Positions 2,413-61,276 of a stretch of 64,000 bases of DNA are shown here, one piece after another (the stretch's first letter is position 1; the number at the start of each line of letters is the position of its first letter). Location of the stretch: the NCBI RefSeq assembly GCF_035594765.1, contig NC_085845.1:145530897-145594896 (forward strand). Reading direction: 5' to 3'. The DNA comes from Anolis carolinensis (taxonomy: Eukaryota). Below the pieces are notes generated by a model, which saw only the letters and a list, made by a program, of their open reading frames with translations, had not been told where the DNA came from and searched no databases. Made by a program: the position numbers and the translations under genes.

Positions 2413-2420
2413 GGTTAAAG

Positions 2421-2555
2421 CAGTGGTTCTTAACCAGTGGGTTCCCAGATGTTTTGGCCTTCAACTCCCAGAAATCCTAACAGCTGTTAAACTGGCTGGG
2501 ATTTCTGAAAGTTGTAGGCAAAAACACCTGGGGACCCACAGGTTGAGAACCACTG
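2421..2555. mobile_element. hAT (Charlie-like) MITE, ~135 bp
   Basis: TIRs cagtggttct / agaaccactg; 8-bp flanks ggttaaag / ggtttaag. Confidence 0.85.
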
Positions 2556-2705
2556 GGTTTAAGTAAAGAAGCTCAGGGATGGGTCCAATGGTGTCACTCT
2601 GCTGCCCCTTTCTATACACTGATTCCCTTAACATAATCAACATGGGAAAAGGTGGGTTGCTGTGAGTCTTCCGGGCTGTATGGCCATGTTCCAGAAGCTT
2701 TCTTT

Positions 2706-5461: not shown

Positions 5462-5608
5462 GGCCCCTTCTACACTGCCATATATCCAGATTATCAAAGG
5501 AGGTAATCAACATTATCTGGTTTGAACTGGATTATTTTAGTCTACACTGCCATATAATCCAGTTCAAAGCAGATAATGTAGATTTGATATAGTAGTGTAG
5601 AAGGGGCC
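5462..5608. mobile_element. PIF/Harbinger-like MITE
   Basis: TIR ggccccttctacact / agtgtagaaggggcc; TSD TGA. Confidence 0.85.
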
Positions 5609-5636
5609 TGAAATTGGATTATATGACAGTGTAGAT

Positions 5637-5772
5637 CAATGATTCTCAACCTATGACTCTACAGTGTGTTTTGGCCCACAACTCCCAGAAATCCCAGCCA
5701 GTTTGCCAGCTGTTAGAATTTCTGGGAGTTGAAGGCCAAAACATCTGGGGACCCACAGGTTGAGAAACACTG
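5637..5772. mobile_element. hAT (Charlie-like) MITE
   Basis: Same family as 2421-2555; perfect 8-bp TSD gtgtagat at 5629-5636 and 5773-5780. Confidence 0.88.
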
Positions 5773-5947
5773 GTGTAGATCCAGCCACAGTCATTCAGTT
5801 TTACTAGCTGGAAGTTGAACCAACTTTTTCTAGGAGATATGGACACAAACATAAATTGTAATAATGAAATGTATGGGGACACAACTTGTCTCATGAAAAC
5901 CCTTCATTTATTTTTTAAAATATGCAGTTTATTGCTTATTTCACATA

Positions 5948-19214: not shown

Positions 19215-19348
19215 CAGTGGTTCTCAACCTGTGGGTCTCCAGATGTTTTGGTTTTCAACTCCCAGAAATCATAACAGCTGGTAAGCTGGCCAGGATTTCT
19301 GGGAGTTGTAGGCCAAAATACCTGGGTCCCACAGATTGAGAACCACGG
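19215..19348. mobile_element. hAT (Charlie-like) MITE
   Basis: Perfect 8-bp TSD ttctagga at 19207-19214 and 19349-19356. Confidence 0.9.
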
Positions 19349-25757: not shown

Positions 25758-25894
25758 CAGTGGTTCTCTCAACCCATGGGTCCCCAGGTGTTTTGACCTA
25801 CAACTCCCAGAAATCCCAGCCAGTTTATCACTGTTAGGATTTCTGGGAATTGAAAGCCAAAACCTCTGGAGAACCCACAGGTTGAGAACTACTG
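25758..25894. mobile_element. hAT (Charlie-like) MITE
   Basis: TSD ca(c/t)taagg at 25750-25757 and 25895-25902. Confidence 0.88.
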
Positions 25895-26284
25895 CATTAA
25901 GGGCTTGCCTACATAAATAAAAAAGCAGACTTGTTTCAAATTCAATGTTGGTAGTCTTCACAATGGATGGCAACTTCAAATGAATAGCTTGGCTTCTCTG
26001 CACTTAATCTAACTTTGATCTGGTTTAAGCAAAGATAGGGGATATACTAGTGTTTGTAGGAAATATTGGAGTATCCTAGAACTTTGAGGCTCTCTGGACA
26101 GCTTGATTGAGTCCATTTCAGCCTAATCTATTGTCCATACAGACACTTCCACCATCACCCTTTCCCTGCACTCATTAGCACAAGGCAAGGGATAGATCAT
26201 CCCCATGTTGCTCTACTCTCCCCTGACAAGTGACAGCCAGATGCTCAGGTGGCTCCATGGCCATGAAGAAATGGTGGAGGTGAC

Positions 26285-30265: not shown

Positions 30266-31399
30266 GGGATACATTCTGGACTGATTGCAAAGAACTCAGG
30301 TGAGGATTACCACGTGCGTATTAGACATTGCTCACTTTATTGGTGTTTGCCTAACTCTGAAGTTCTATAAAATACTTATAAACTTCATGTGTCTCAATCA
30401 GTGATGTGTGTAGATTGTACTGAAAGCAGTGCTGGGGCATGGAAGATCCTTTGGCCAAAGTTACTGCTTGTTGTCTGTTTGCCTTCCTGCTCAGTTTCAG
30501 GACTCATTCCAGTTCTGTGTTTCACTTAGGAGGGCTGATAGTTCCGCCCAACCCAACAGCTGAACCTTGTTTTAGTTCTACTTTAGGATTATTTCCAATG
30601 CCTTTTTAACTGTTGTAATGTGCTATAAGTCTTCAGCTGAGACAAAGATGGGATAGAAATAAATATAAGAATTTAATCAAGTTGCGCACATTCTAGTAGA
30701 GTGCACAATACAAGTTTTGAAAGCATCACTATTTTTGCTCCCTAGTCAATGTTATAAACTTTTTATTGAAAAAAATCTGTTTACTACAGATAAATCCTTA
30801 CACACACACACACAACTCTTATTTTGACACTGCTCATCTGAAATTTATAATTACTTTCCTCAGAACTTTCTACAGATAATAAATGCTCATGGTAAACTGG
30901 TTGAACTTTCTTTATTTTTCCACAGACATAACTGTCTGGCACAGCCTTTCAGTTTAACACATCACATTAATATTTCAATAGAAAAATTAACAGTGTCAGC
31001 TAGGAGATGGATCTAAACCAAATGTTCTCTAAACATTCCTCAAAACTGAGAAGCAAGAGACAAGATAATTTCAACTTGAAAATTATGGGTGTCAACCTGT
31101 GAATAACCTTTGGCTTTTATAGTTTTTTTATTATTTTGTGCACAGATATAAATCAAGCTGTAACAGGCTTCAGTCGAGCATACTGAATTTGCTGGCTCAG
31201 CTGAGATCAAACCTATATACTAGGCTTGCTCAAATAATTCGATTTCCCCGTTACCCGTTATTAATTCGTTACTTTCATTACTTTTGAAGCAATATACGGC
31301 CTTGATTGTCCACACGTCTGGATATCGCGGTTTCGAACCGCGAGAGGCTGTTTTTTGTTATGTCGTCGTTTTTTTCGTTAGGAAAAAAAGCTTTTGCAA

Positions 31400-31810
31400 A
31401 TCACCCAAACTCCCACCATTCCTAACAGCCTCAGGCCCTTTCCTTTTGCCCCTCAGCAAAAGGGGCGTCATGGGCTCAGCCAATGGGAGGGGGCGAGGGG
31501 GAAGGAGGCCGAGGAGGAAGAGGAAGACGGAGGGGGGAAATGGCCGCCGCCGCCGCCTCAGCTCAGGCCTGGTGTCTCTCTGTGAGCTGGGAAGGCGGCG
31601 GATGGAGCCGGGAATGGAGAGACCGAGAGAGACAGAGACACACAGAGATGGAGGATGGCGCGGGGCCCGGCGGTGAGGAGGAAGAGGCCCGGGATGTGAG
31701 GGGGTGTGGGCCAGGCCCGTCCTCGGCCGCTCCCGGGGAGGGAGGGAGGGAGGACTACGACTCCCAGGGGCCCAGATTCGCACCCTCCCTCCCCCCAATA
31801 CAGGTCTCCA
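31400..31810 (+). promoter_or_regulatory. CpG-island, promoter/first-exon-like segment inside the hAT element
   Basis: CGTCA 31466-31470, agCCAATg 31480-31484, purine-rich leader, YY1-like aaATGGCCGCC 31538-31548, (GCC)n, candidate donors GTGAG at 31582 and 31673. Confidence 0.6.
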
Positions 31811-31850
31811 TACCACGTTACATGAACTTGAATGGATAGTATACTGTGGT

Positions 31851-32240
31851 TGTGTTGTTGAAAGCTTTCATGGCCGGGATCACACTGTTGTGGTATGTAT
31901 TCCGGGCTCTATGGCCATGTGCCAGAAGCATTCTCTCCTGACATTTCACCCACATCTGTTGCAGACATACTCAGAGGTTTTGACGTCTGTGCGAAGCTAG
32001 GCAAGTGGGGTTTATATATCTGTGGAAGGTCCAGGGTGGGAGAAAGAACTCTTGTCTGTGGGAGGCAAGTGTGAATGTTGCAATTGGTCACCTTGATTAG
32101 CATTGAATAGCCTTGCAGCTTCAAAGCCTGGCTGCTTCCTACCTGGGGGAATCCTTTGTTGGGAGGTATTAGCTGGCCCTGATTGTTTCCTGTCTGGAAT
32201 TCCCATTTTCTGGGTGTTGTTCTTTTACTGTCCTGATTTT
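31851..32240 (-). mobile_element. Penelope-like pLTR fragment with degenerate hammerhead (31937-31977, G8>T)
   Basis: Homologous to the other pLTR copies; includes the 3' tail. Confidence 0.88.
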
Positions 32241-32402
32241 AGCTTTTCTGTAGCTAAAATGCATATAAAATTGATTCTATAGGGAGGATAAATGATTGGA
32301 TTTCAACTCCTACAGCTTAGCTTTCTCTGCCAATAATGGTACCATACCAAACTAAAGCTCCCAAGATTCTGTAGCAGTGAGCCATCTTGGATATTGTAAG
32401 GG

Positions 32403-32403
<1 letters not shown>

Positions 32404-32436
<33 letters not shown>
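32404..32436. repeat. (TAT)n microsatellite
   Basis: Direct reading. Confidence 0.95.
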
Positions 32437-32437
<1 letters not shown>

Positions 32438-32538
32438 GACCTTGCTCCCAGGAAGGTGCCTTCGCTGTGGCTCCCAACTTATCTATCTACTTTTCCACAT
32501 ATTCTCCACATTGTGTGTATGTGTATGTATATATACAT

Positions 32539-32849
32539 GAGCCCCGATGGCGAAGTGTGTTAAAGCACTGAGCTGCTGAACTTGCAGACCGAAAGGTCCC
32601 AGGTTCAAATCCCGGGAGCAGAGTGAGTGCCCGCTGTTAGCTCCAGCTTCTGCCAACCTAGCAGCTTGAAAACATGCCAATGTGAGTAGATCAATAGGTA
32701 CCGCTCTGGCGGGAAGGTAATGGCACTCCATGTAGTCATGCCGGCCACATGACCTTGGAGGTGTCTATGGACAACACTGGCTCTTGGGCTTAGAAATGGA
32801 GATGAGCACCAACCCCCAGAGTCAGACATGACTGAACTTAACGTCAAGG
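32539..32849 (+). mobile_element. Sauria SINE, runs into the gap
   Basis: Match to the other copies. Confidence 0.92.
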
Positions 32850-33004
32850 NNNNNNNNNNNNNNNNNNNNNNNNNNNNNNNNNNNNNNNNNNNNNNNNNNN
32901 NNNNNNNNNNNNNNNNNNNNNNNNNNNNNNNNNNNNNNNNNNNNNNNNNNNNNNNNNNNNNNNNNNNNNNNNNNNNNNNNNNNNNNNNNNNNNNNNNNNN
33001 NNNN
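32850..33004. other. Assembly gap (N run)
   Basis: Ns in the sequence. Confidence 1.
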
Positions 33005-35034
33005 TTTAACAAAGTTTCAGCCACAAAAACAAAGTTTCTGAAGTAGAACAATGACTTTCACAGTAAAGACAACCCAATTTAACAGGAAATAAGACTTTCA
33101 AACCAGGAACAGATTTCTGCAATTATTAAAAAATGGTTTATTATAAAAGCTATGAAAATTCGCCAAAAATCAGAGGATAAGGGAAACGTTCCAAATTTTG
33201 GTGAGCTATCAGTGTTAAATGTATTCTACCACTGTACCACATTTGAAGAAGATCACTCAAAAAATGAGGGCGGAAGAGTCCTGTAAAATCTCCCCTCGTG
33301 CTGTTTTTTTTGGCCACTGCGCATGCGCGTCCGCCATTAACGAATTAATTTAGAAACTAACGAATTTTCGTTAATTTCGAATTTTTTTGGGGGCAAAATT
33401 CGGAAATGACATCAGAAACGAAACGCTGGCGCCCCCTACTTTTGAAACGAGTTTAGAATCAATTTTTTCATGGATCGCTCAAGCCTACTATATACATCAC
33501 CCACACCAATATTTTGGGTTTTTTATTATTCCAAATTTGGCCTGAGAATAACAACATTTTATTTGTTACCCACCTCTCCTAACGGCTCAAAGTGGGGTAC
33601 AACAAAGTCAACAACATAATGAACATAAAATATATACAATAAAATACACAGATAAAAACACACCATTATGAAACATACACCAAATATAGGGTACAAAAAT
33701 CAACAGACAATGACAATAGAATGCAAATTCAAAACTCATGATTCAAAGTTGACTAGGTAGGTTAAAGATATATTTTCAATTGATGTCAATATTTAGCCAC
33801 TAGATTTATAAACTAGGTGGTGGTGTAGTGGTAAATCCCCAGATAATTCCCCAGAGTGCATACTTTTACTCTTTTCCTATCATTTTTACATCAAACAGAT
33901 GCAACTTGTCTTATGCATTCTAGGATATTTGTGCTCATTGATTTTGGCCAGTTTTAATCATAAAATTATCTCTTTTTAAGTCCAGTAATGGCCCAATTCT
34001 ACAATCAAATTTGCATCCTTAACTGAGATGCTTGGAACTGGAAGTGTTCTGGATTTCAGATTTTTTGGGGAGACTTTAGAATATGTGTATTTGTATATAC
34101 ATACATAATGACAAATCTTGAAGATGGTACTCAAGTCTAAACACTGCACTAAACACTGAGACTTTTGGGAGGACATTTTTTGTCCCTTGTTTCATTAGAT
34201 TAAGAAAAAATGAAAACATAAATTGCAGGCATATCTAACTGGGTCAGAAACAAGAATGGTTTTCCAGATGTTGCTTTGCTATTCTTATTATCGCTTACCA
34301 CTGAGTCTGTTGGCTACAGCTGAAAGAAGTTGTAAATCTACATCTGGAAAGGCATACATTCTCCACAAGAACAACTGTCCAATAATAAAATTTATTTATT
34401 TACTTCATTTTTACCCCAACTTTCTCACCTCATAGGGGACTCAAGGAGGCCTACAAACTCCAGCAAAGACTTCCCTGGTGCAGGTTGTGTTCAGAGGTTT
34501 TTCAGTTCTTGATTAGCTAATTTTTGAAGCAGAAAAGTGTTGTATCCCTAATAGTTGGATTTGTCCCTTGATTTGCCTGCCAGTTTATTATGTTTTAAAA
34601 ATCCTCTTTGGAAATATTTATTTAGTGCTTTATGTACACTAATTGATGTCAAGAACTTGGATTAATAAAAGATGAAATGCTAAGCCAATCTGCTAAGCCA
34701 ACAAGTCAAATTTAAACTCTCCCAAAAATCCCCGAGAGGTTTCTGAGAGCTTTCTTAACATATTTGTAACTCTCTGTTGAACTAAGAACAGCTTGCCGAA
34801 CATTGCAAGATCTAGAATTTCCATGGAATTATTATATCAAATATAGACCCTTTATCTAGAACTGTGATTTTCTGTCATGTCTGTAAAATTCCATTGCCTT
34901 TGAGTAGTCTTTAAAAAGTCTCCAACATAAGTTGGGTCTCCTTTATCTGAAATGTTTGGGACCAGTTTTTTTTTTAAAAAATCAGGCTTTCCCCCAGATT
35001 TTAGAATATCCCTATTTGCCTTTACATTGTGAAT

Positions 35035-57090: not shown

Positions 57091-57761
57091 CAGGCAGTCC
57101 CCGAGTTACAAATATCCAATTTACAAATTAATCATAGTTAAGAATGAGGGGCCCCTAGTGGCACAGAGTGTTAAAGCGCTGAGCTGCTGAACTTGCAGAC
57201 CAAAAGGTCCTGGGTTCAAATCCTGAATTCAGAGTGAGTTCCTGCTGTAAGCTCCAGCTCCTGCCAACCTAGCAGTTCGAAAACATGCGAATGTGAGTAG
57301 ATTGATAGGTACCGCTCCGGCGGGAAGGTAACGGCGTTCCATGCAGTCATGCCGGCCACATGACCTTGGAGGTGTCTACGGACAACGCCGGCTCTTCGGC
57401 CTAGAAATGGAGATGAGCACCAACCCCCAGAGTCAGACACGACTGGACTTAACGTCAGGGGAAACCTTTACCTTTACCTTAAGAATGAGGGTGAGACAAC
57501 AGGTGAGAGAAATTTACCCCTAGGAAGGGAAATACACTCCTGAAAGAGTTATCATGGGGAAAAGGTGTCTCAACTGTGATATCATGGAGTTATCATGGGG
57601 AAAAGATGTTTCAAGCTTTATCACCACTTCTTGTTTCCACAACAAGCCAAATTTTTCAAAATCCAACTAACACAGGGACAGAAAATGAGGTGAAATCTTC
57701 TGAACTGGCACACAGACAGCAAAACAAACACCATGGAGTTGTAAACCTATGCTATCCAATG

Positions 57762-58039: not shown

Positions 58040-59544
58040 GGAAAAGATGGTTTTGGATTATTTAACCCTTGAGTTCTTCTTCTGAATCATGTACATCTGG
58101 ACTCACTCAGAGCAAAGCACTTAAGGATGTGCTTATCGCTGAACATCTGAGTTCAGGGGAAGGGAGGGAGTGCAGGTGGGAATCCCTGCTAGCCCTTTGC
58201 CATGCTGAGTCCACAGGGAATACTGGCTACTTTGCCATAAATCAATGGAGGTATCAGCATGTAATGACATTAATTTGACAGCAGTCCATACACAGAGTCT
58301 TATGAGCCTCCCTGAAGTGTTTAGTAAGTCAGGCATCCCTTGTTATTACCATGCTATTGGTTCACAATGAACATAAAGTGGTTTGCATATCCAAAGAGAG
58401 TTCTTCTTCCTTCTCCTTAGCTGATTCTGTATTCAAAGAGTGGAAGCAGCAATTAAAAAATTGGCATTTTTAAACATTTGATAGTAGACATCCCTGACAG
58501 TTTTTTTTCCCTGCTCCTGCTGTATGATAAAATTATCATATGGAGGAATAGCAAAAGCAGCATAACAATAAAAGGAAACAAGACGAAAGGAATTATGACA
58601 AACATAAGAAGAAAGCAGTATGCTTCTCAGTCCAAGAAGCTGATCTCAGGACTTTCTAAGCAGTGCAAGCAAAATAAATTCTATATTGAAACACTCATGG
58701 TTTAAAAGAATGCTAGGTAATCTCAAAGGGATTCCAGAATACACTTTCATTAGGTGACATTCTTTTTTTTCCTTTTTTTTTAAAATCAGGAAATGGTGAA
58801 AACACTGTGGGCCTTTGGCTGTTTAGTGGATACCGTAGGAAGAGGCAACTACCCTTTACAGTTGTAGTTTTACAACACATTTAGCCTTTTCTGCCAAAGC
58901 ATGATGATGCCTCATCAAGTTACGAATTCTGGGATTCCATAGCATTGATCTAGTTAGAGTGGTATCAAACTGCATTAATTCAGCAGTGTACATGCATCAG
59001 TAATATGAAACCCACCATTCACTACCACTGAATAGCACAGAATTTGAAAGTAATGTAAACATTACAATAACATTCTCTAAAAAGAATTCTTCCACTTTTG
59101 GAGTGAGTAATGGGTGTAGCAATGTTAGCTTGCAAAAGTAATATTTTGTAAGAAGTAGGACTTCAATGGCATATTGTTGTAAGAAGTAAATTTTGGGGGT
59201 TATGATTAAACAATACTTTTAAAATGGGAACATGTTTTGAAACATTGCAACAGTAATTTGCAAATTGTTCTCTTATCAATTCTAGTCTGTCTTAAGGCAA
59301 CGAACATAATGAAATGGCAAAGAGCAAAGTAGCATGTTATCACTGAAATACTAAAACAGGCAAAATTACCTTTGAAACACTAAAAGAAATGAAAACAGTG
59401 AACTGCTTTTAAAAAACATTCTAATAAGCAATGTGAATGAATAACATTAAAACATTAAAAAACTATAAAAATTGTAATGGTGTGTGATCTCTTAAGCTTG
59501 ATATATTTTGGGGTGTCATTCTAACTTAATTAAAGTCTGTGTCT

Positions 59545-59690
59545 TTGGGTTGCTGTGGGTTTTCTGGGCTGTATGGCCATGTTCCATGTTCCATGCTCCC
59601 AATGTTTCTCCCACATCTATAGCAAGGATCCTCAGGGGTTGTGAGGTCTGTTGGAAACTAGACAAGTGGGGTTTATATATATGTGGAATG
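59545..59690 (-). mobile_element. Older-subfamily Penelope pLTR fragment with decayed hammerhead
   Basis: Resembles the 48.6 kb copy (gtgaggtctgttggaaactag) more than the adjacent young element. Confidence 0.8.
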
Positions 59691-59693
59691 TTT

Positions 59694-61034
59694 GTTGAAA
59701 AGATCAGCAACCTCAATCTAAGCACCAAGGACATCCTGATCAGCTTTGATGTGGTGTCCCTTTTTACCAAAGTCCCAGTAGCTGACACCCTCACACTAAT
59801 CAAACAAAACTTCCCAGAAGACATCACAGCCCTGTTTCACCATTGCCTCACCACTAGCTACTTTCAGTGGGACACTGGATTCTATGAACAGAAGGATGGA
59901 GTGGCCATGGGGAGCCCTCTCAGCCCAGTAGTAGCAAATTTCTATATGGAATACTTTGAAAAACAGGCCCTAGAAACAGCACCAAAAAAGCCAACTGTTT
60001 GGTTCAGATACGTAGATGACACCTTCACGATTTGGAGCCATGGAGAGGAAGAACTCAGCAAGTTCCTGGACCATCTTAACAGCATCCACCCAAACATCCA
60101 ATTCACCATGGAAAAAGAAAAGGAAGGAAAACTGCCATTTCTAGATGTTCTGGTCATCCGCAAACCCAATCAACAATTGGGCCACACAGTTTACAGAAAA
60201 CCTACACACACAGATAGATACCTTCATAAAAACTCCAACCATCACCCAAGTCAAAAAAGGAGCACAATCAAAGCCCTGACAGACCGTGCACAAAGAATCT
60301 GCGAACCTCACCTCCTCCAAGGTGAACTTAACCACCTAAACTGGGCTCTACAGGCCAATGGATACTCCACCACAGACATCAGAAGAGCTGCAAGGCCAAG
60401 AACAAGTCATGAGAGTCAAGACAAAGATCCACCCAGAGGAAAGGTGTTCTTACCATACATCAAGGGAACTACTGACCGCATAGGGAAGCTGATGAAGAAG
60501 CACAACCTACAAACTATCTACAGACCCACGAAGAAAATCCAACAAATGCTACGGTCAGCGAAGGACAAGAGGGATCCTCTCTCTTCTGCAGGAGTCTACC
60601 GGATACCATGCAGCTGTGGACAAGTCTACATAGGGACCACCAAACGCAGCGCCCAAACAAGAGTCAAAGAACATGAAAGGCACTGCAGACTAATTCAACC
60701 AGAGAAATCAGCCATAGCAGAGCATTTGATGAACCAGCCTGGACACAGGATACTATTTGAGAACACAAAAATGCTGGACCATTCTAACAACTATCATGTC
60801 AGACTACACAGAGAAGCCATTGAAATCCACAAGCATGTGGACAACTTCAACAGAAAGGAAGAAACCATGAAAATGAACAAAATCTGGCTACCAGTATTAA
60901 AAAACTCAAGAATCAAAACAGTAAATAAAAAGCAATACTCTGAAAACAGAGGATTTCCAGACATGAATCAACCTAGGACAGTTAACGACTCTAAACAAAG
61001 GATGCCCCAGAGGCAGGAAGAAGACAGCAGATAA
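59694..61034 (+). CDS. Penelope-like RT + GIY-YIG endonuclease (N-terminally truncated)
   Basis: RT motifs SFDVVSLFTKVP, QKDGVAMGSPLSP, FRYVDDTF; GIY-YIG motif GVYRIPCSCGQVYIGTTKR..R..EH; no internal stops. Confidence 0.93.
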   Translation, partial: VEKISNLNLSTKDILISFDVVSLFTKVPVADTLTLIKQNFPEDITALFHHCLTTSYFQWDTGFYEQKDGVAMGSPLSPVVANFYMEYFEKQALETAPKKPTVWFRYVDDTFTIWSHGEEELSKFLDHLNSIHPNIQFTMEKEKEGKLPFLDVLVIRKPNQQLGHTVYRKPTHTDRYLHKNSNHHPSQKRSTIKALTDRAQRICEPHLLQGELNHLNWALQANGYSTTDIRRAARPRTSHESQDKDPPRGKVFLPYIKGTTDRIGKLMKKHNLQTIYRPTKKIQQMLRSAKDKRDPLSSAGVYRIPCSCGQVYIGTTKRSAQTRVKEHERHCRLIQPEKSAIAEHLMNQPGHRILFENTKMLDHSNNYHVRLHREAIEIHKHVDNFNRKEETMKMNKIWLPVLKNSRIKTVNKKQYSENRGFPDMNQPRTVNDSKQRMPQRQEEDSR

Positions 61035-61276
61035 GCTTTTCAATGCTAATTAAAGTGATTAACTACACATTCACACTGACCTCTCTCACCCTAGACTTTC
61101 CACAGATATATATTTACCTCTTTGCTTAGTTTTCTCCATACCTCACAACCTCTGAGGATGCCTGCCATAGATGTGGGCGAAACGTCAGGAGAGAATGCTT
61201 CTGGAACATGGCCACACAGCCCGAAAGACACACAACAACCCTGTGATCCTGGCCATGAAAGCCTTCGACAACACAT
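59696..61276 (+). mobile_element. Young 5'-truncated Penelope-like (Poseidon-type) retroelement
   Basis: Uninterrupted RT/GIY-YIG frame, pLTR with hammerhead and tail; candidate TSD tgtttgt at 59689-59695 and 61277-61283. Confidence 0.95.
61149..61189 (+). ncRNA. Minimal type I hammerhead ribozyme, perfect copy
   Basis: Helix I CCT/AGG; CTGAGGA 61152-61158; helix II GCCTGC/GTGGGC (61160-61165 / 61173-61178); GAAA 61179-61182; palindromic ACGT helix III; predicted cleavage after C61186. Confidence 0.88.

What the first reader, a model, noticed from the sequence alone, without database searches (positions are those of the whole stretch)
31221..33487. Pack-type hAT element carrying a CpG-island promoter / first-exon-like cargo
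Seen: the only CpG island in the window (31400-31810) has a CRE half-site, a CCAAT box, a YY1-like aaATGGCCGCC and GTGAG donor-like sites. It and ~1 kb of intron-like DNA lie between hAT-type TIRs flanked by a perfect 8-bp TSD (ctatatac). The right end has an NRF1-type TGCGCATGCGC at 33318-33328. Established: TIR elements that capture host fragments (Pack-MULE/Pack-TIR) are best known in plants and less characterised in reptiles. Inference: a housekeeping-gene promoter plus exon 1 was captured and moved here, giving a mobile promoter that might drive new transcripts. Retained CpGs suggest it is young or unmethylated. Caveat: the element spans an N gap.
Basis: partly seen in the sequence, partly recalled or inferred. 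Interest (0 to 1): 0.78.

Follow-up and report, generated by a model that had tools for sequence, protein, structure and literature searches.

The report
Known anole hobo-N transposon copy
This is an ordinary, young copy of hobo-N, a jumping-gene family described in the green anole in 2010, and its GC-rich "promoter-like" block is carried by many other copies of the family rather than being a gene piece captured at this site.

Summary
At 31221-33487 there is a non-autonomous hAT element with a perfect 8-bp target duplication (CTATATAC), 11-bp ends and CpG-rich subterminal repeats. It contains the only strongly GC/CpG-rich stretch of the window.

It is not a newly found Pack-type element. Its ends (TAGGCTTGCTC / TAGGCTTGAGC), its target site (NTANNTAN) and its Penelope-plus-ACA-SINE interior match the hobo-N_AC families of Anolis carolinensis (Novick et al. 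2010, PMC3014272). hobo-N15_AC is the closest by description. That paper already reports that hobo elements incorporate "filler" genomic DNA.

Contigs from four public runs show the GC block is multi-copy. Dozens of contigs per run cover it, and this copy differs from the family majority at about 1% of positions. So the block is family sequence, not cargo unique to this site. No host parent gene, protein relative or transcript evidence was found. The block alone has a CpG o/e of 0.52.

One run holds a contig that joins both flanks with a single target site, so the insertion is polymorphic. That is typical of hobo in this lizard (PMC7561263). Contigs in two runs bridge the N gap, so a mis-join is unlikely.

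The scan has already noted many "hAT with CpG-island cargo" elements elsewhere in this genome. Whether the block is hobo's own leader or an old capture is unresolved.

The parts
31213..31220 (.). Left copy of the 8-bp target-site duplication, CTATATAC
   Evidence: It fits the published hobo target consensus NTANNTAN.
31221..31231 (+). 5' terminal inverted repeat, TAGGCTTGCTC
   Evidence: It equals the hobo_AC TIR TAGGCTTGMTC of Novick et al. Table 1.
31221..31399 (+). 5' arm with CGTTA/TTCGT subterminal repeats (CpG o/e 1.99)
   Evidence: Summed contig depth is 10^3-10^4 times that of the flank in four runs.
31400..31850 (+). GC-rich, purine-skewed block (GC 0.667 and CpG o/e 0.52 over 31400-31810). 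It is family-wide internal sequence. 31408-31457 is also shared with another abundant repeat.
   Evidence: multi-copy (25-52 contigs in X1 carry the family-majority letter at 31519, 31697 and 31818); loose ends at 31408 and 31457; no protein or Pfam relatives.
31851..32242 (.). Penelope-like repeat fragment carried inside the element
   Evidence: Ten relatives in the window at 72-86% identity. Novick et al. describe a Penelope insertion in ancestral group A hobo-N elements. CpG o/e 0.19.
32243..32532 (.). AT-rich filler with an (ATT)n run at about 32405-32437
   Evidence: Depth is similar to that of the GC block in all four runs. CpG o/e 0.11.
32533..32849 (+). tRNA-derived SINE (ACA-SINE type), lacking about 25 nt of its tail at the gap edge
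   Evidence: Novick et al. describe a 333-bp ACA SINE in group A hobo-N elements.
32850..33004 (.). Assembly gap (155 N; length only estimated)
   Evidence: It is bridged by contigs in runs X2 and X17 with 39 letters between the sides. The letters are not used.
33005..33487 (+). 3' arm. The inner part is AT-rich. The outer 190 bp holds TAACG/ACGAA repeats and the GCGCATGCGC palindrome at 33319-33328.
   Evidence: Repeat-level depth, with six majority-letter differences.
33477..33487 (-). 3' terminal inverted repeat, TAGGCTTGAGC on the minus strand
   Evidence: It equals the group B hobo-N TIR in Novick et al. Table 1.
33488..33495 (.). Right copy of the target-site duplication, CTATATAC
   Evidence: The empty-site contig in run X1 resumes exactly here.

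Best explanation
The stretch 31221-33487 is one young copy of a non-autonomous hobo-N_AC element of the green anole. It has a group A type body with a group B type 3' end, which by description is closest to hobo-N15_AC.

Inferred mechanism. The element encodes nothing. It is moved in trans by the transposase of the autonomous hobo_AC element. That transposase would recognise the 11-bp ends and the CGTTA/TTCGT subterminal repeats, cut the element out and paste it into an NTANNTAN target, producing the 8-bp duplication.

Interior. The GC-rich block, the Penelope fragment, the filler and the SINE were acquired before the family amplified. They travel passively in many copies.

CpG content. The block looks like a CpG island because the family is very young (about 1% from its majority sequence) and has had no time to lose CpGs. 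The older repeat pieces inside it were already CpG-depleted when they were taken up.

Population status. The insertion at this site still segregates in the population.
For: Shown:
- The TSD, the ends and the strand-inverted subterminal repeats.
- Exact agreement of both 11-bp ends, the target consensus, the size class and the Penelope-plus-ACA-SINE interior with Novick et al. 2010, Table 1 and text.
- The arms and the GC block lie under 10^3-10^4 times the summed contig depth of the unique left flank in four runs.
- 25-88 contigs in X1 carry one common alternative letter at each of 31277, 31349, 31519, 31697 and 31818. That gives about 11-13 differences over about 1,110 bp.
- GC-block depth tracks the depth of the filler at 32256-32359 and never exceeds that of the arms. 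So the block lives mainly inside hobo elements.
- A joint from 32218 to 32711 removes 178 bp of the SINE. It matches the published 176-bp SINE-deletion variant of hobo-N1/N6.
- An 809-nt contig in run X1 joins 30800-31208 to 33488-33744 with one mismatch on each side. This is the empty site.
- A contig in run X2 runs from the flank 20 bp into the element with no mismatch. This is the filled site.
- Bourgeois et al. 2020 report hobo as the most numerous polymorphic DNA transposon class in this lizard, with almost no fixed copies.
- CpG o/e is about 2.0 in the arms and 0.52 in the GC block. It is 0.19 in Penelope, 0.11 in the filler, 0.42 in the SINE and 0.07-0.15 in the flanks.

Inferred, not shown: trans-mobilisation by hobo_AC.
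Against: - I could not align the element to the Repbase consensus sequences, so the assignment to a particular hobo-N family rests on the published description.
- The 5' end has C at position 9, where group A and N15 consensus ends have A.
- The nominal length of 2,267 bp (about 2,150 if the gap holds 39 letters) is shorter than the 2,490 bp given for N15.
- Summed contig depth is not a copy number, and low-complexity GA-rich parts of the block may attract unrelated contigs.
- Contigs are too short (150-250 nt) to show directly that arm and GC block are contiguous in other copies.
- The origin of the GC block is not resolved.
Confidence: 0.9

Rival explanations
1. Family-level Pack-type capture. 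The GC block is a piece of a host CpG-island promoter with a first exon. It was taken up once by the ancestor of the group A hobo-N lineage and then amplified with it.
For: - Novick et al. state that hobo elements capture extraneous genomic DNA and that the central regions are family-specific. Only about 150 bp at the 5' end is shared by all families. The block starts about 180 bp in.
- Block depth is 3-10 times lower than arm depth, so only a subset of hobo families carries it.
- CpG o/e of 0.52 is far above that of the other captured pieces, as expected for DNA from an unmethylated island.
- GTGAG x3 and ATGGCCGCC are mildly over-represented.
Against: - No parent gene was found.
- No protein relatives exist for ORFs on either strand.
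- There are no Sp1 boxes, and CCAAT and CRE are at chance level.
- The block alone fails the usual o/e threshold of 0.6.
- Part of it (31408-31457) is itself shared with another abundant repeat; that repeat's flanking letters resemble the SPIN/hAT-N1-type MITEs of the window.
Confidence: 0.4
2. Native leader. The GC block is hobo_AC's own promoter and 5' untranslated leader, kept in internally deleted derivatives. This would resemble the GC-rich leader I recall for maize Ac (from memory, not checked here).
For: - It sits directly inside the 5' subterminal repeats, where hAT transposase genes start.
- Its CpG retention resembles that of the arms rather than that of the captured old repeats.
- Positive GC and AT skew fits transcription inward on the + strand.
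- Novick et al. consider group A elements to be deletion derivatives of hobo_AC.
Against: - The published comparison of all 16 families uses only 150 bp of the 5' region and calls the central region family-specific.
- Block depth is well below arm depth.
- I could not obtain an autonomous copy to compare.
Confidence: 0.25
3. Copy-specific capture, or a native promoter of this locus. This is the first reader's reading: the island is single-copy cargo or belongs to a gene here.
For: None beyond the sequence motifs.
Against: - The block is multi-copy in four runs from four studies.
- The whole element, block included, is absent from the empty-site allele in run X1, so it is not a resident promoter of this locus.
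Confidence: 0.03

Closest known systems
[quoted passage not shown] 2010, Genome Biol Evol 3:1-14, PMC3014272)
   Same: The 11-bp ends TAGGCTTGMTC / TAGGCTTGAGC, an 8-bp TSD fitting NTANNTAN, the roughly 2-kb size class, the internal Penelope fragment and ACA SINE, very low divergence, and a group A body with a group B 3' end.
   Different: Position 9 of the 5' end is C, not A. The length is 2.15-2.27 kb against 2.49 kb for the N15 consensus. The paper does not mention the GC-rich block.
hobo_AC autonomous element (9-15 kb) of the green anole
   Same: The same TIR type and target site. It is the presumed source of the transposase.
   Different: This copy has no transposase and is about a sixth of the length.
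Pack-MULE / Pack-TIR (transduplicating) elements of plants
   Same: A TIR element that carries and amplifies non-transposon genomic DNA.
   Different: Pack elements are defined by identifiable fragments of host genes with a parental copy. Here no parent gene or exon could be identified, and much of the cargo is other transposons.
Maize Ac 5' leader (GC-rich untranslated leader next to the subterminal repeats); recalled from memory, not checked here
   Same: A GC/CpG-rich stretch just inside the 5' subterminal repeats of a hAT element.
   Different: No sequence relationship was tested. Transcription from the anole block has not been shown.

Membership tests
hAT superfamily | 8-bp target-site duplication | tested here: met
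   A perfect CTATATAC lies on both sides.
hAT superfamily | Short terminal inverted repeats with a YARNG-type tip | tested here: inconclusive
   The 11-bp ends match at 9 of 11 positions, with 8 perfect. The tip TAGGC fits YARN but has C, not G, at position 5. Novick et al. nevertheless place the family in hAT.
hAT superfamily | Short subterminal repeats in opposite orientation at the two ends | tested here: met
   CGTTA/TTCGT on the left and TAACG/ACGAA on the right are enriched about 40-fold over the window.
hAT superfamily | Transposase with a hAT dimerisation domain (autonomous members only) | tested here: not met
   No ORF with a Pfam domain lies in the GC block, and the ORFs elsewhere in the element are short. 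It is a non-autonomous member.
hobo-N_AC (Novick et al. 2010) | TIR TAGGCTTGMTC / TAGGCTTSATC / TAGGCTTGAGC | tested here: met
   The 5' end is TAGGCTTGCTC and the 3' end TAGGCTTGAGC.
hobo-N_AC (Novick et al. 2010) | Target consensus NTRNNYAN / NTANNTAN | tested here: met
   CTATATAC fits both.
hobo-N_AC (Novick et al. 2010) | Group A body: internal Penelope fragment plus ACA SINE | tested here: met
   The Penelope-like repeat is at 31851-32242 and the SINE at 32533-32849.
hobo-N_AC (Novick et al. 2010) | Very low divergence from the family consensus (0.2-1.2%) | tested here: met
   About 11-13 majority-letter differences over about 1,110 bp of arms and GC block.
hobo-N_AC (Novick et al. 2010) | Full-length alignment to a Repbase hobo-N consensus | not testable with these tools
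The paper's supplements are not held.
Pack-type (transduplicating) TIR element | Cargo is a fragment of a host gene with an identifiable parental copy lacking TIRs | tested here: inconclusive
   There are no protein relatives of ORFs in the block. The cargo is multi-copy at family level. A single-copy parent cannot be looked for without the genome.
CpG-island promoter | GC at least 0.5-0.55, CpG o/e at least 0.6-0.65, over 200-500 bp | tested here: inconclusive
   The block alone has GC 0.667 and o/e 0.52, which fails. With the hAT arm included (31221-31850) GC is 0.57 and o/e 0.75, which passes.
CpG-island promoter | Transcription start or spliced transcripts from the block | not tested
No listed run is on record as RNA. 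The two 'RNA?' runs cover the unique flank like DNA.

The most novel reading that the evidence does not exclude
The GC-rich block carried by the group A type hobo-N elements is a working, unmethylated CpG-island promoter, either hobo's own or captured. A still-active transposon family would then be scattering many segregating copies of a portable promoter, each with splice-donor-like sites, through the anole genome. This would create population-variable new transcription starts.
Probability: 0.12. Interest if true: 0.5.

Novelty: already known. Interest (0 to 1): 0.14.

Why it matters
For annotation, this finding and the many look-alike 'Pack-hAT with CpG island' notes in this genome should be filed as copies of one published family, hobo-N_AC. 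They are not independent gene-capture events. The copy documents a segregating insertion, which fits published population data. One open question of modest interest remains: whether the family's GC-rich block has promoter activity, and where it came from.

Tried and rejected
- Protein word searches with the two longest ORFs of the GC block (152 aa on the minus strand, 118 aa on the plus strand) gave no hit at E <= 0.001. A Pfam scan gave nothing. I had hoped to fetch other copies or a parent gene through predicted proteins, and this failed.
- Exact-pattern scans of metagenome and viral contigs with arm sequences found nothing.
- The Rfam scan gave only sub-threshold miRNA-like hits on a GGGAGGG/CCCTCCC hairpin at 31730-31802. 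I rejected these as the product of composition.
- The scan's own index, searched by sequence, was blank.
- The paper's supplements, where consensus sequences might be, are not held.
- I considered that the GC block might belong to the adjacent Penelope fragment. I rejected this because four window copies of that repeat start aligning at 31851.
- I considered that the block might be a fragment of another high-copy family. I rejected this because its depth never exceeds that of the hobo arms, except for the 50-bp piece at 31408-31457.
- RNA evidence could not be obtained.
- The read-laying table printed the letters that bridge the gap without being asked. I did not use, search or reproduce them.
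Full report
**What is in the sequence.** The element runs from 31221 to 33487. It is flanked by a perfect 8-bp direct repeat, CTATATAC, at 31213-31220 and 33488-33495. Its ends are TAGGCTTGCTC on the left and, read on the minus strand, TAGGCTTGAGC on the right. They match perfectly over 8 bp and at 9 of 11 positions. TAGGCTTG or its complement occurs four times in the 64 kb, two of them at these ends. Just inside the ends lie short CpG-containing repeats in opposite orientation: CGTTA/TTCGT on the left and TAACG/ACGAA on the right. They occur at 3.4-3.7 per 100 bp, against 0.09 in the window as a whole. These are the hallmarks of a hAT element.

**The interior is a mosaic**:
- a GC-rich block at about 31400-31850;
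- a Penelope-like repeat fragment at 31851-32242, with ten relatives in the window;
- 290 bp of AT-rich filler with an (ATT)n run;
- a tRNA-derived SINE at 32533-32849, with nine relatives in the window; other copies continue for about 25 more bases, which here fall in the gap;
- the 155-N gap;
- a 483-bp right arm.

**The gap.** In the contigs of two independent runs (X2, X17), position 32849 is joined to 33005 with 39 letters between them. The depth is far above single copy, so this SINE-to-right-arm arrangement is the family's standard structure. Together with the matched TSD and ends on either side of the gap, this makes a mis-join unlikely. It also suggests the true gap is shorter than 155. 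The tool printed the letters unasked. Reading frame is not an issue because nothing here is coding.

**The 'CpG island'.** The stretch 31451-31750 is the only strongly GC/CpG-rich part of the window. The only other 200-bp hit is a SINE copy at 57251-57450. Taken alone, the block 31400-31810 has GC 0.667 but a CpG o/e of only 0.52. The usual island criteria are met only when the hAT arm, whose o/e is about 2.0, is included.

CCAAT and the CRE half-site are as frequent in dinucleotide shuffles (p = 0.11 and 0.25). Three GTGAG sites and ATGGCCGCC are mildly unusual (p about 0.01 each). There is no Sp1 GC box, although about one is expected by composition. ORFs in the block have no Pfam domain and no protein relatives on either strand.

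**Identity.** Novick et al. 2010 (PMC3014272) describe one autonomous hAT of the hobo clade in Anolis carolinensis, hobo_AC. It is 9-15 kb long with TIR TAGGCTTGMTC. They also describe 15 non-autonomous families, hobo-N1 to N15_AC:
- length 1.3-3.4 kb;
- TIR TAGGCTTSATC in group A and TAGGCTTGAGC in group B;
- TSD NTRNNYAN or NTANNTAN;
- 0.2-1.2% divergence from consensus;
- 3,272 copies in total.

[quoted passage not shown] It is also the most numerous family (689 copies) and the youngest (0.23% from consensus).

The element here has a hobo_AC/group A type 5' end, a group B 3' end, a TSD that fits NTANNTAN, and the Penelope-plus-SINE body. It is therefore a hobo-N_AC copy, closest by description to N15. 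The caveats are a C rather than an A at TIR position 9, a somewhat shorter length, and the fact that no consensus could be aligned.

[quoted passage not shown] It reasons this for the old repeats inside autonomous hobo_AC, which it says came in with genomic filler rather than by later insertion. It also describes the non-autonomous families as incorporating genomic DNA that often contains other transposons. It does not mention the GC-rich block.

**Is the GC block unique cargo? No.** I laid Logan contigs of four runs from four studies on 30800-33900 at 80% likeness.
- The unique left flank has summed depths of about 50-80 (X1), 7-10 (X2), 4-10 (X17) and 1-6 (X18).
- The arms reach 10^4-10^6, and the GC block reaches about 10^3-10^5.
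- At 31277, 31349, 31519, 31697 and 31818, between 25 and 88 different contigs in X1 carry one and the same alternative letter; the other three runs show the same letter on fewer contigs. Six places in the right arm behave the same way. So this copy differs from the family majority at roughly 1% of positions, and the block belongs to the family sequence.
- Block depth tracks the depth of the filler at 32256-32359 in all four runs. It stays 1.5-17 times below the arms. This suggests that a subset of hobo families (those with the group A type body) carries both, and that the block is not part of some larger independent repeat family.
- The exception is 31408-31457. Loose ends on both sides and a depth peak show that this 50-bp piece is shared with another abundant repeat. 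The consensus of the letters beside it resembles the SPIN/hAT-N1-type MITEs of the window, and the piece itself shares about 20 bp with their interior.
- A high-depth joint from 32218 to 32711 removes 178 bp of the SINE. This matches the 176-bp SINE deletion published for hobo-N1/N6.

Summed contig depth is not a copy number, and contigs are too short to prove contiguity. The statement is therefore 'multi-copy and family-wide', not a count.

**Insertion polymorphism.**
- An 809-nt contig in X1 (depth 47.7) aligns to 30800-31208 and then to 33488-33744, with one mismatch on each side. It skips the whole element and resumes exactly at the right TSD. This is an empty-site allele.
- That haplotype also carries a GATC insertion after 31009 and a T>G at 30855. 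At 31009 the total depth is about twice that of this contig, so X1 probably holds a second haplotype. Whether that one is filled was not shown.
- A contig in X2 runs from 30800 to 31240 with no mismatch. This is a filled site.
- A contig in X18 stops matching at 31212 and probably represents the empty site.
- The empty contig has 8 letters where the reference has 4 (31209-31212). I could not see them and leave this unexplained.

Polymorphism is expected. Bourgeois et al. 2020 (PMC7561263) found hobo to be the most numerous class of polymorphic DNA transposon in the green anole, with 45,421 polymorphic insertions, a mean frequency of 0.13 and almost none fixed.

**How it most likely works.** Shown here: the anatomy, the family membership by published criteria, the multi-copy status of the block, and the polymorphism. 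Inferred from knowledge of hAT elements and from Novick et al.: the copy is mobilised in trans by hobo_AC transposase acting on the ends and subterminal repeats, and the interior is carried passively.

The CpG pattern fits this account. o/e is about 2.0 in the arms and 0.52 in the block. It is 0.11-0.42 in the Penelope, filler and SINE pieces and 0.07-0.15 in the flanks. The old repeats were already CpG-depleted when incorporated. The arms and the block have not had time to decay in a family only about 1% diverged.

**Origin of the block: unresolved.** There are two live readings.
- Capture of unmethylated CpG-island DNA by the ancestor of the group A lineage. In favour: only about 150 bp of the 5' region is shared by all families, the centre is called family-specific, and block depth is below arm depth.
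- hobo_AC's own promoter and leader, retained in deletion derivatives. In favour: its position next to the 5' subterminal repeats, its retained CpG and its purine skew.

Comparison with the autonomous consensus would settle this, and I could not obtain one. No RNA run was available, and the two runs guessed to be RNA cover the unique flank like DNA. Promoter activity is therefore untested.

**Earlier notes of this scan.** More than a hundred notes in this genome fit 'hAT / CpG island'. One of them describes the same SINE-Penelope-CpG composite 14.5 Mb away. One followed-up case was judged a real but already described kind of DNA-capturing element in the green anole. A 17-kb hobo_AC copy was also recognised elsewhere. 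I treated these as leads only. They agree with the family-wide reading reached here from the contigs and the paper.

**Verdict.** It is not supported in its specific claim that a promoter and exon were captured at or for this copy. The element is an ordinary member of a published family.

Noticed in passing
window 31209-31212, with the X1 contig: The empty-site contig in run X1 has 8 letters where the reference has 4, just left of the single target site. This could be a small indel on that haplotype, which also carries GATC after 31009 and T>G at 30855, or some kind of footprint. The letters were not visible.
   Followed up: no
window 31730-31802: A GGGAGGGAGGGAGG / CCCTCCCTCCCCCC inverted repeat (14-nt arms, 32-nt spacer) lies inside the GC block. 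It gives only sub-threshold miRNA-like Rfam hits (best: mir-1249, 29.7 bits against a gathering score of 83).
   Followed up: partly
window 33318-33335: A perfect NRF1-type palindrome GCGCATGCGC, followed by CCGCCAT (YY1-core-like on the minus strand), lies about 160 bp inside the 3' end. It is unique in the window and sits under repeat-level depth. Whether it is a promoter element facing inward from the 3' end is unknown.
   Followed up: no
window 2420-2580, 5600-5775, 19215-19330, 25760-25920, 41620-41780: Five small MITE-like elements begin with CAGTGGTTCTCAACC-type ends. This is the SPIN / hAT-N1_AC type in Novick et al. Table 1. Their interior shares about 20 bp with 31408-31435 of the GC block.
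   Followed up: partly
window 59508-61034: A 508-aa open reading frame has a reverse-transcriptase domain (RVT_1, E = 1e-12). Its 3' end overlaps a copy (60911-61275) of the same Penelope-like repeat that is carried inside the hobo-N element.
   Followed up: partly
window 33504-33815: The right flank of the insertion is itself moderately repeated. Its summed depth is about 100 times that of the left flank, and dozens of contigs carry alternative letters. So the element landed in or beside another repeat.
   Followed up: no
window 32218-32711: A high-depth contig joint in runs X17 and X18 skips 492 bp (the end of Penelope, the filler and 178 bp of the SINE), with 3 other letters between. This is probably the hobo-N1/N6 type deletion variant of the family.
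   Followed up: partly
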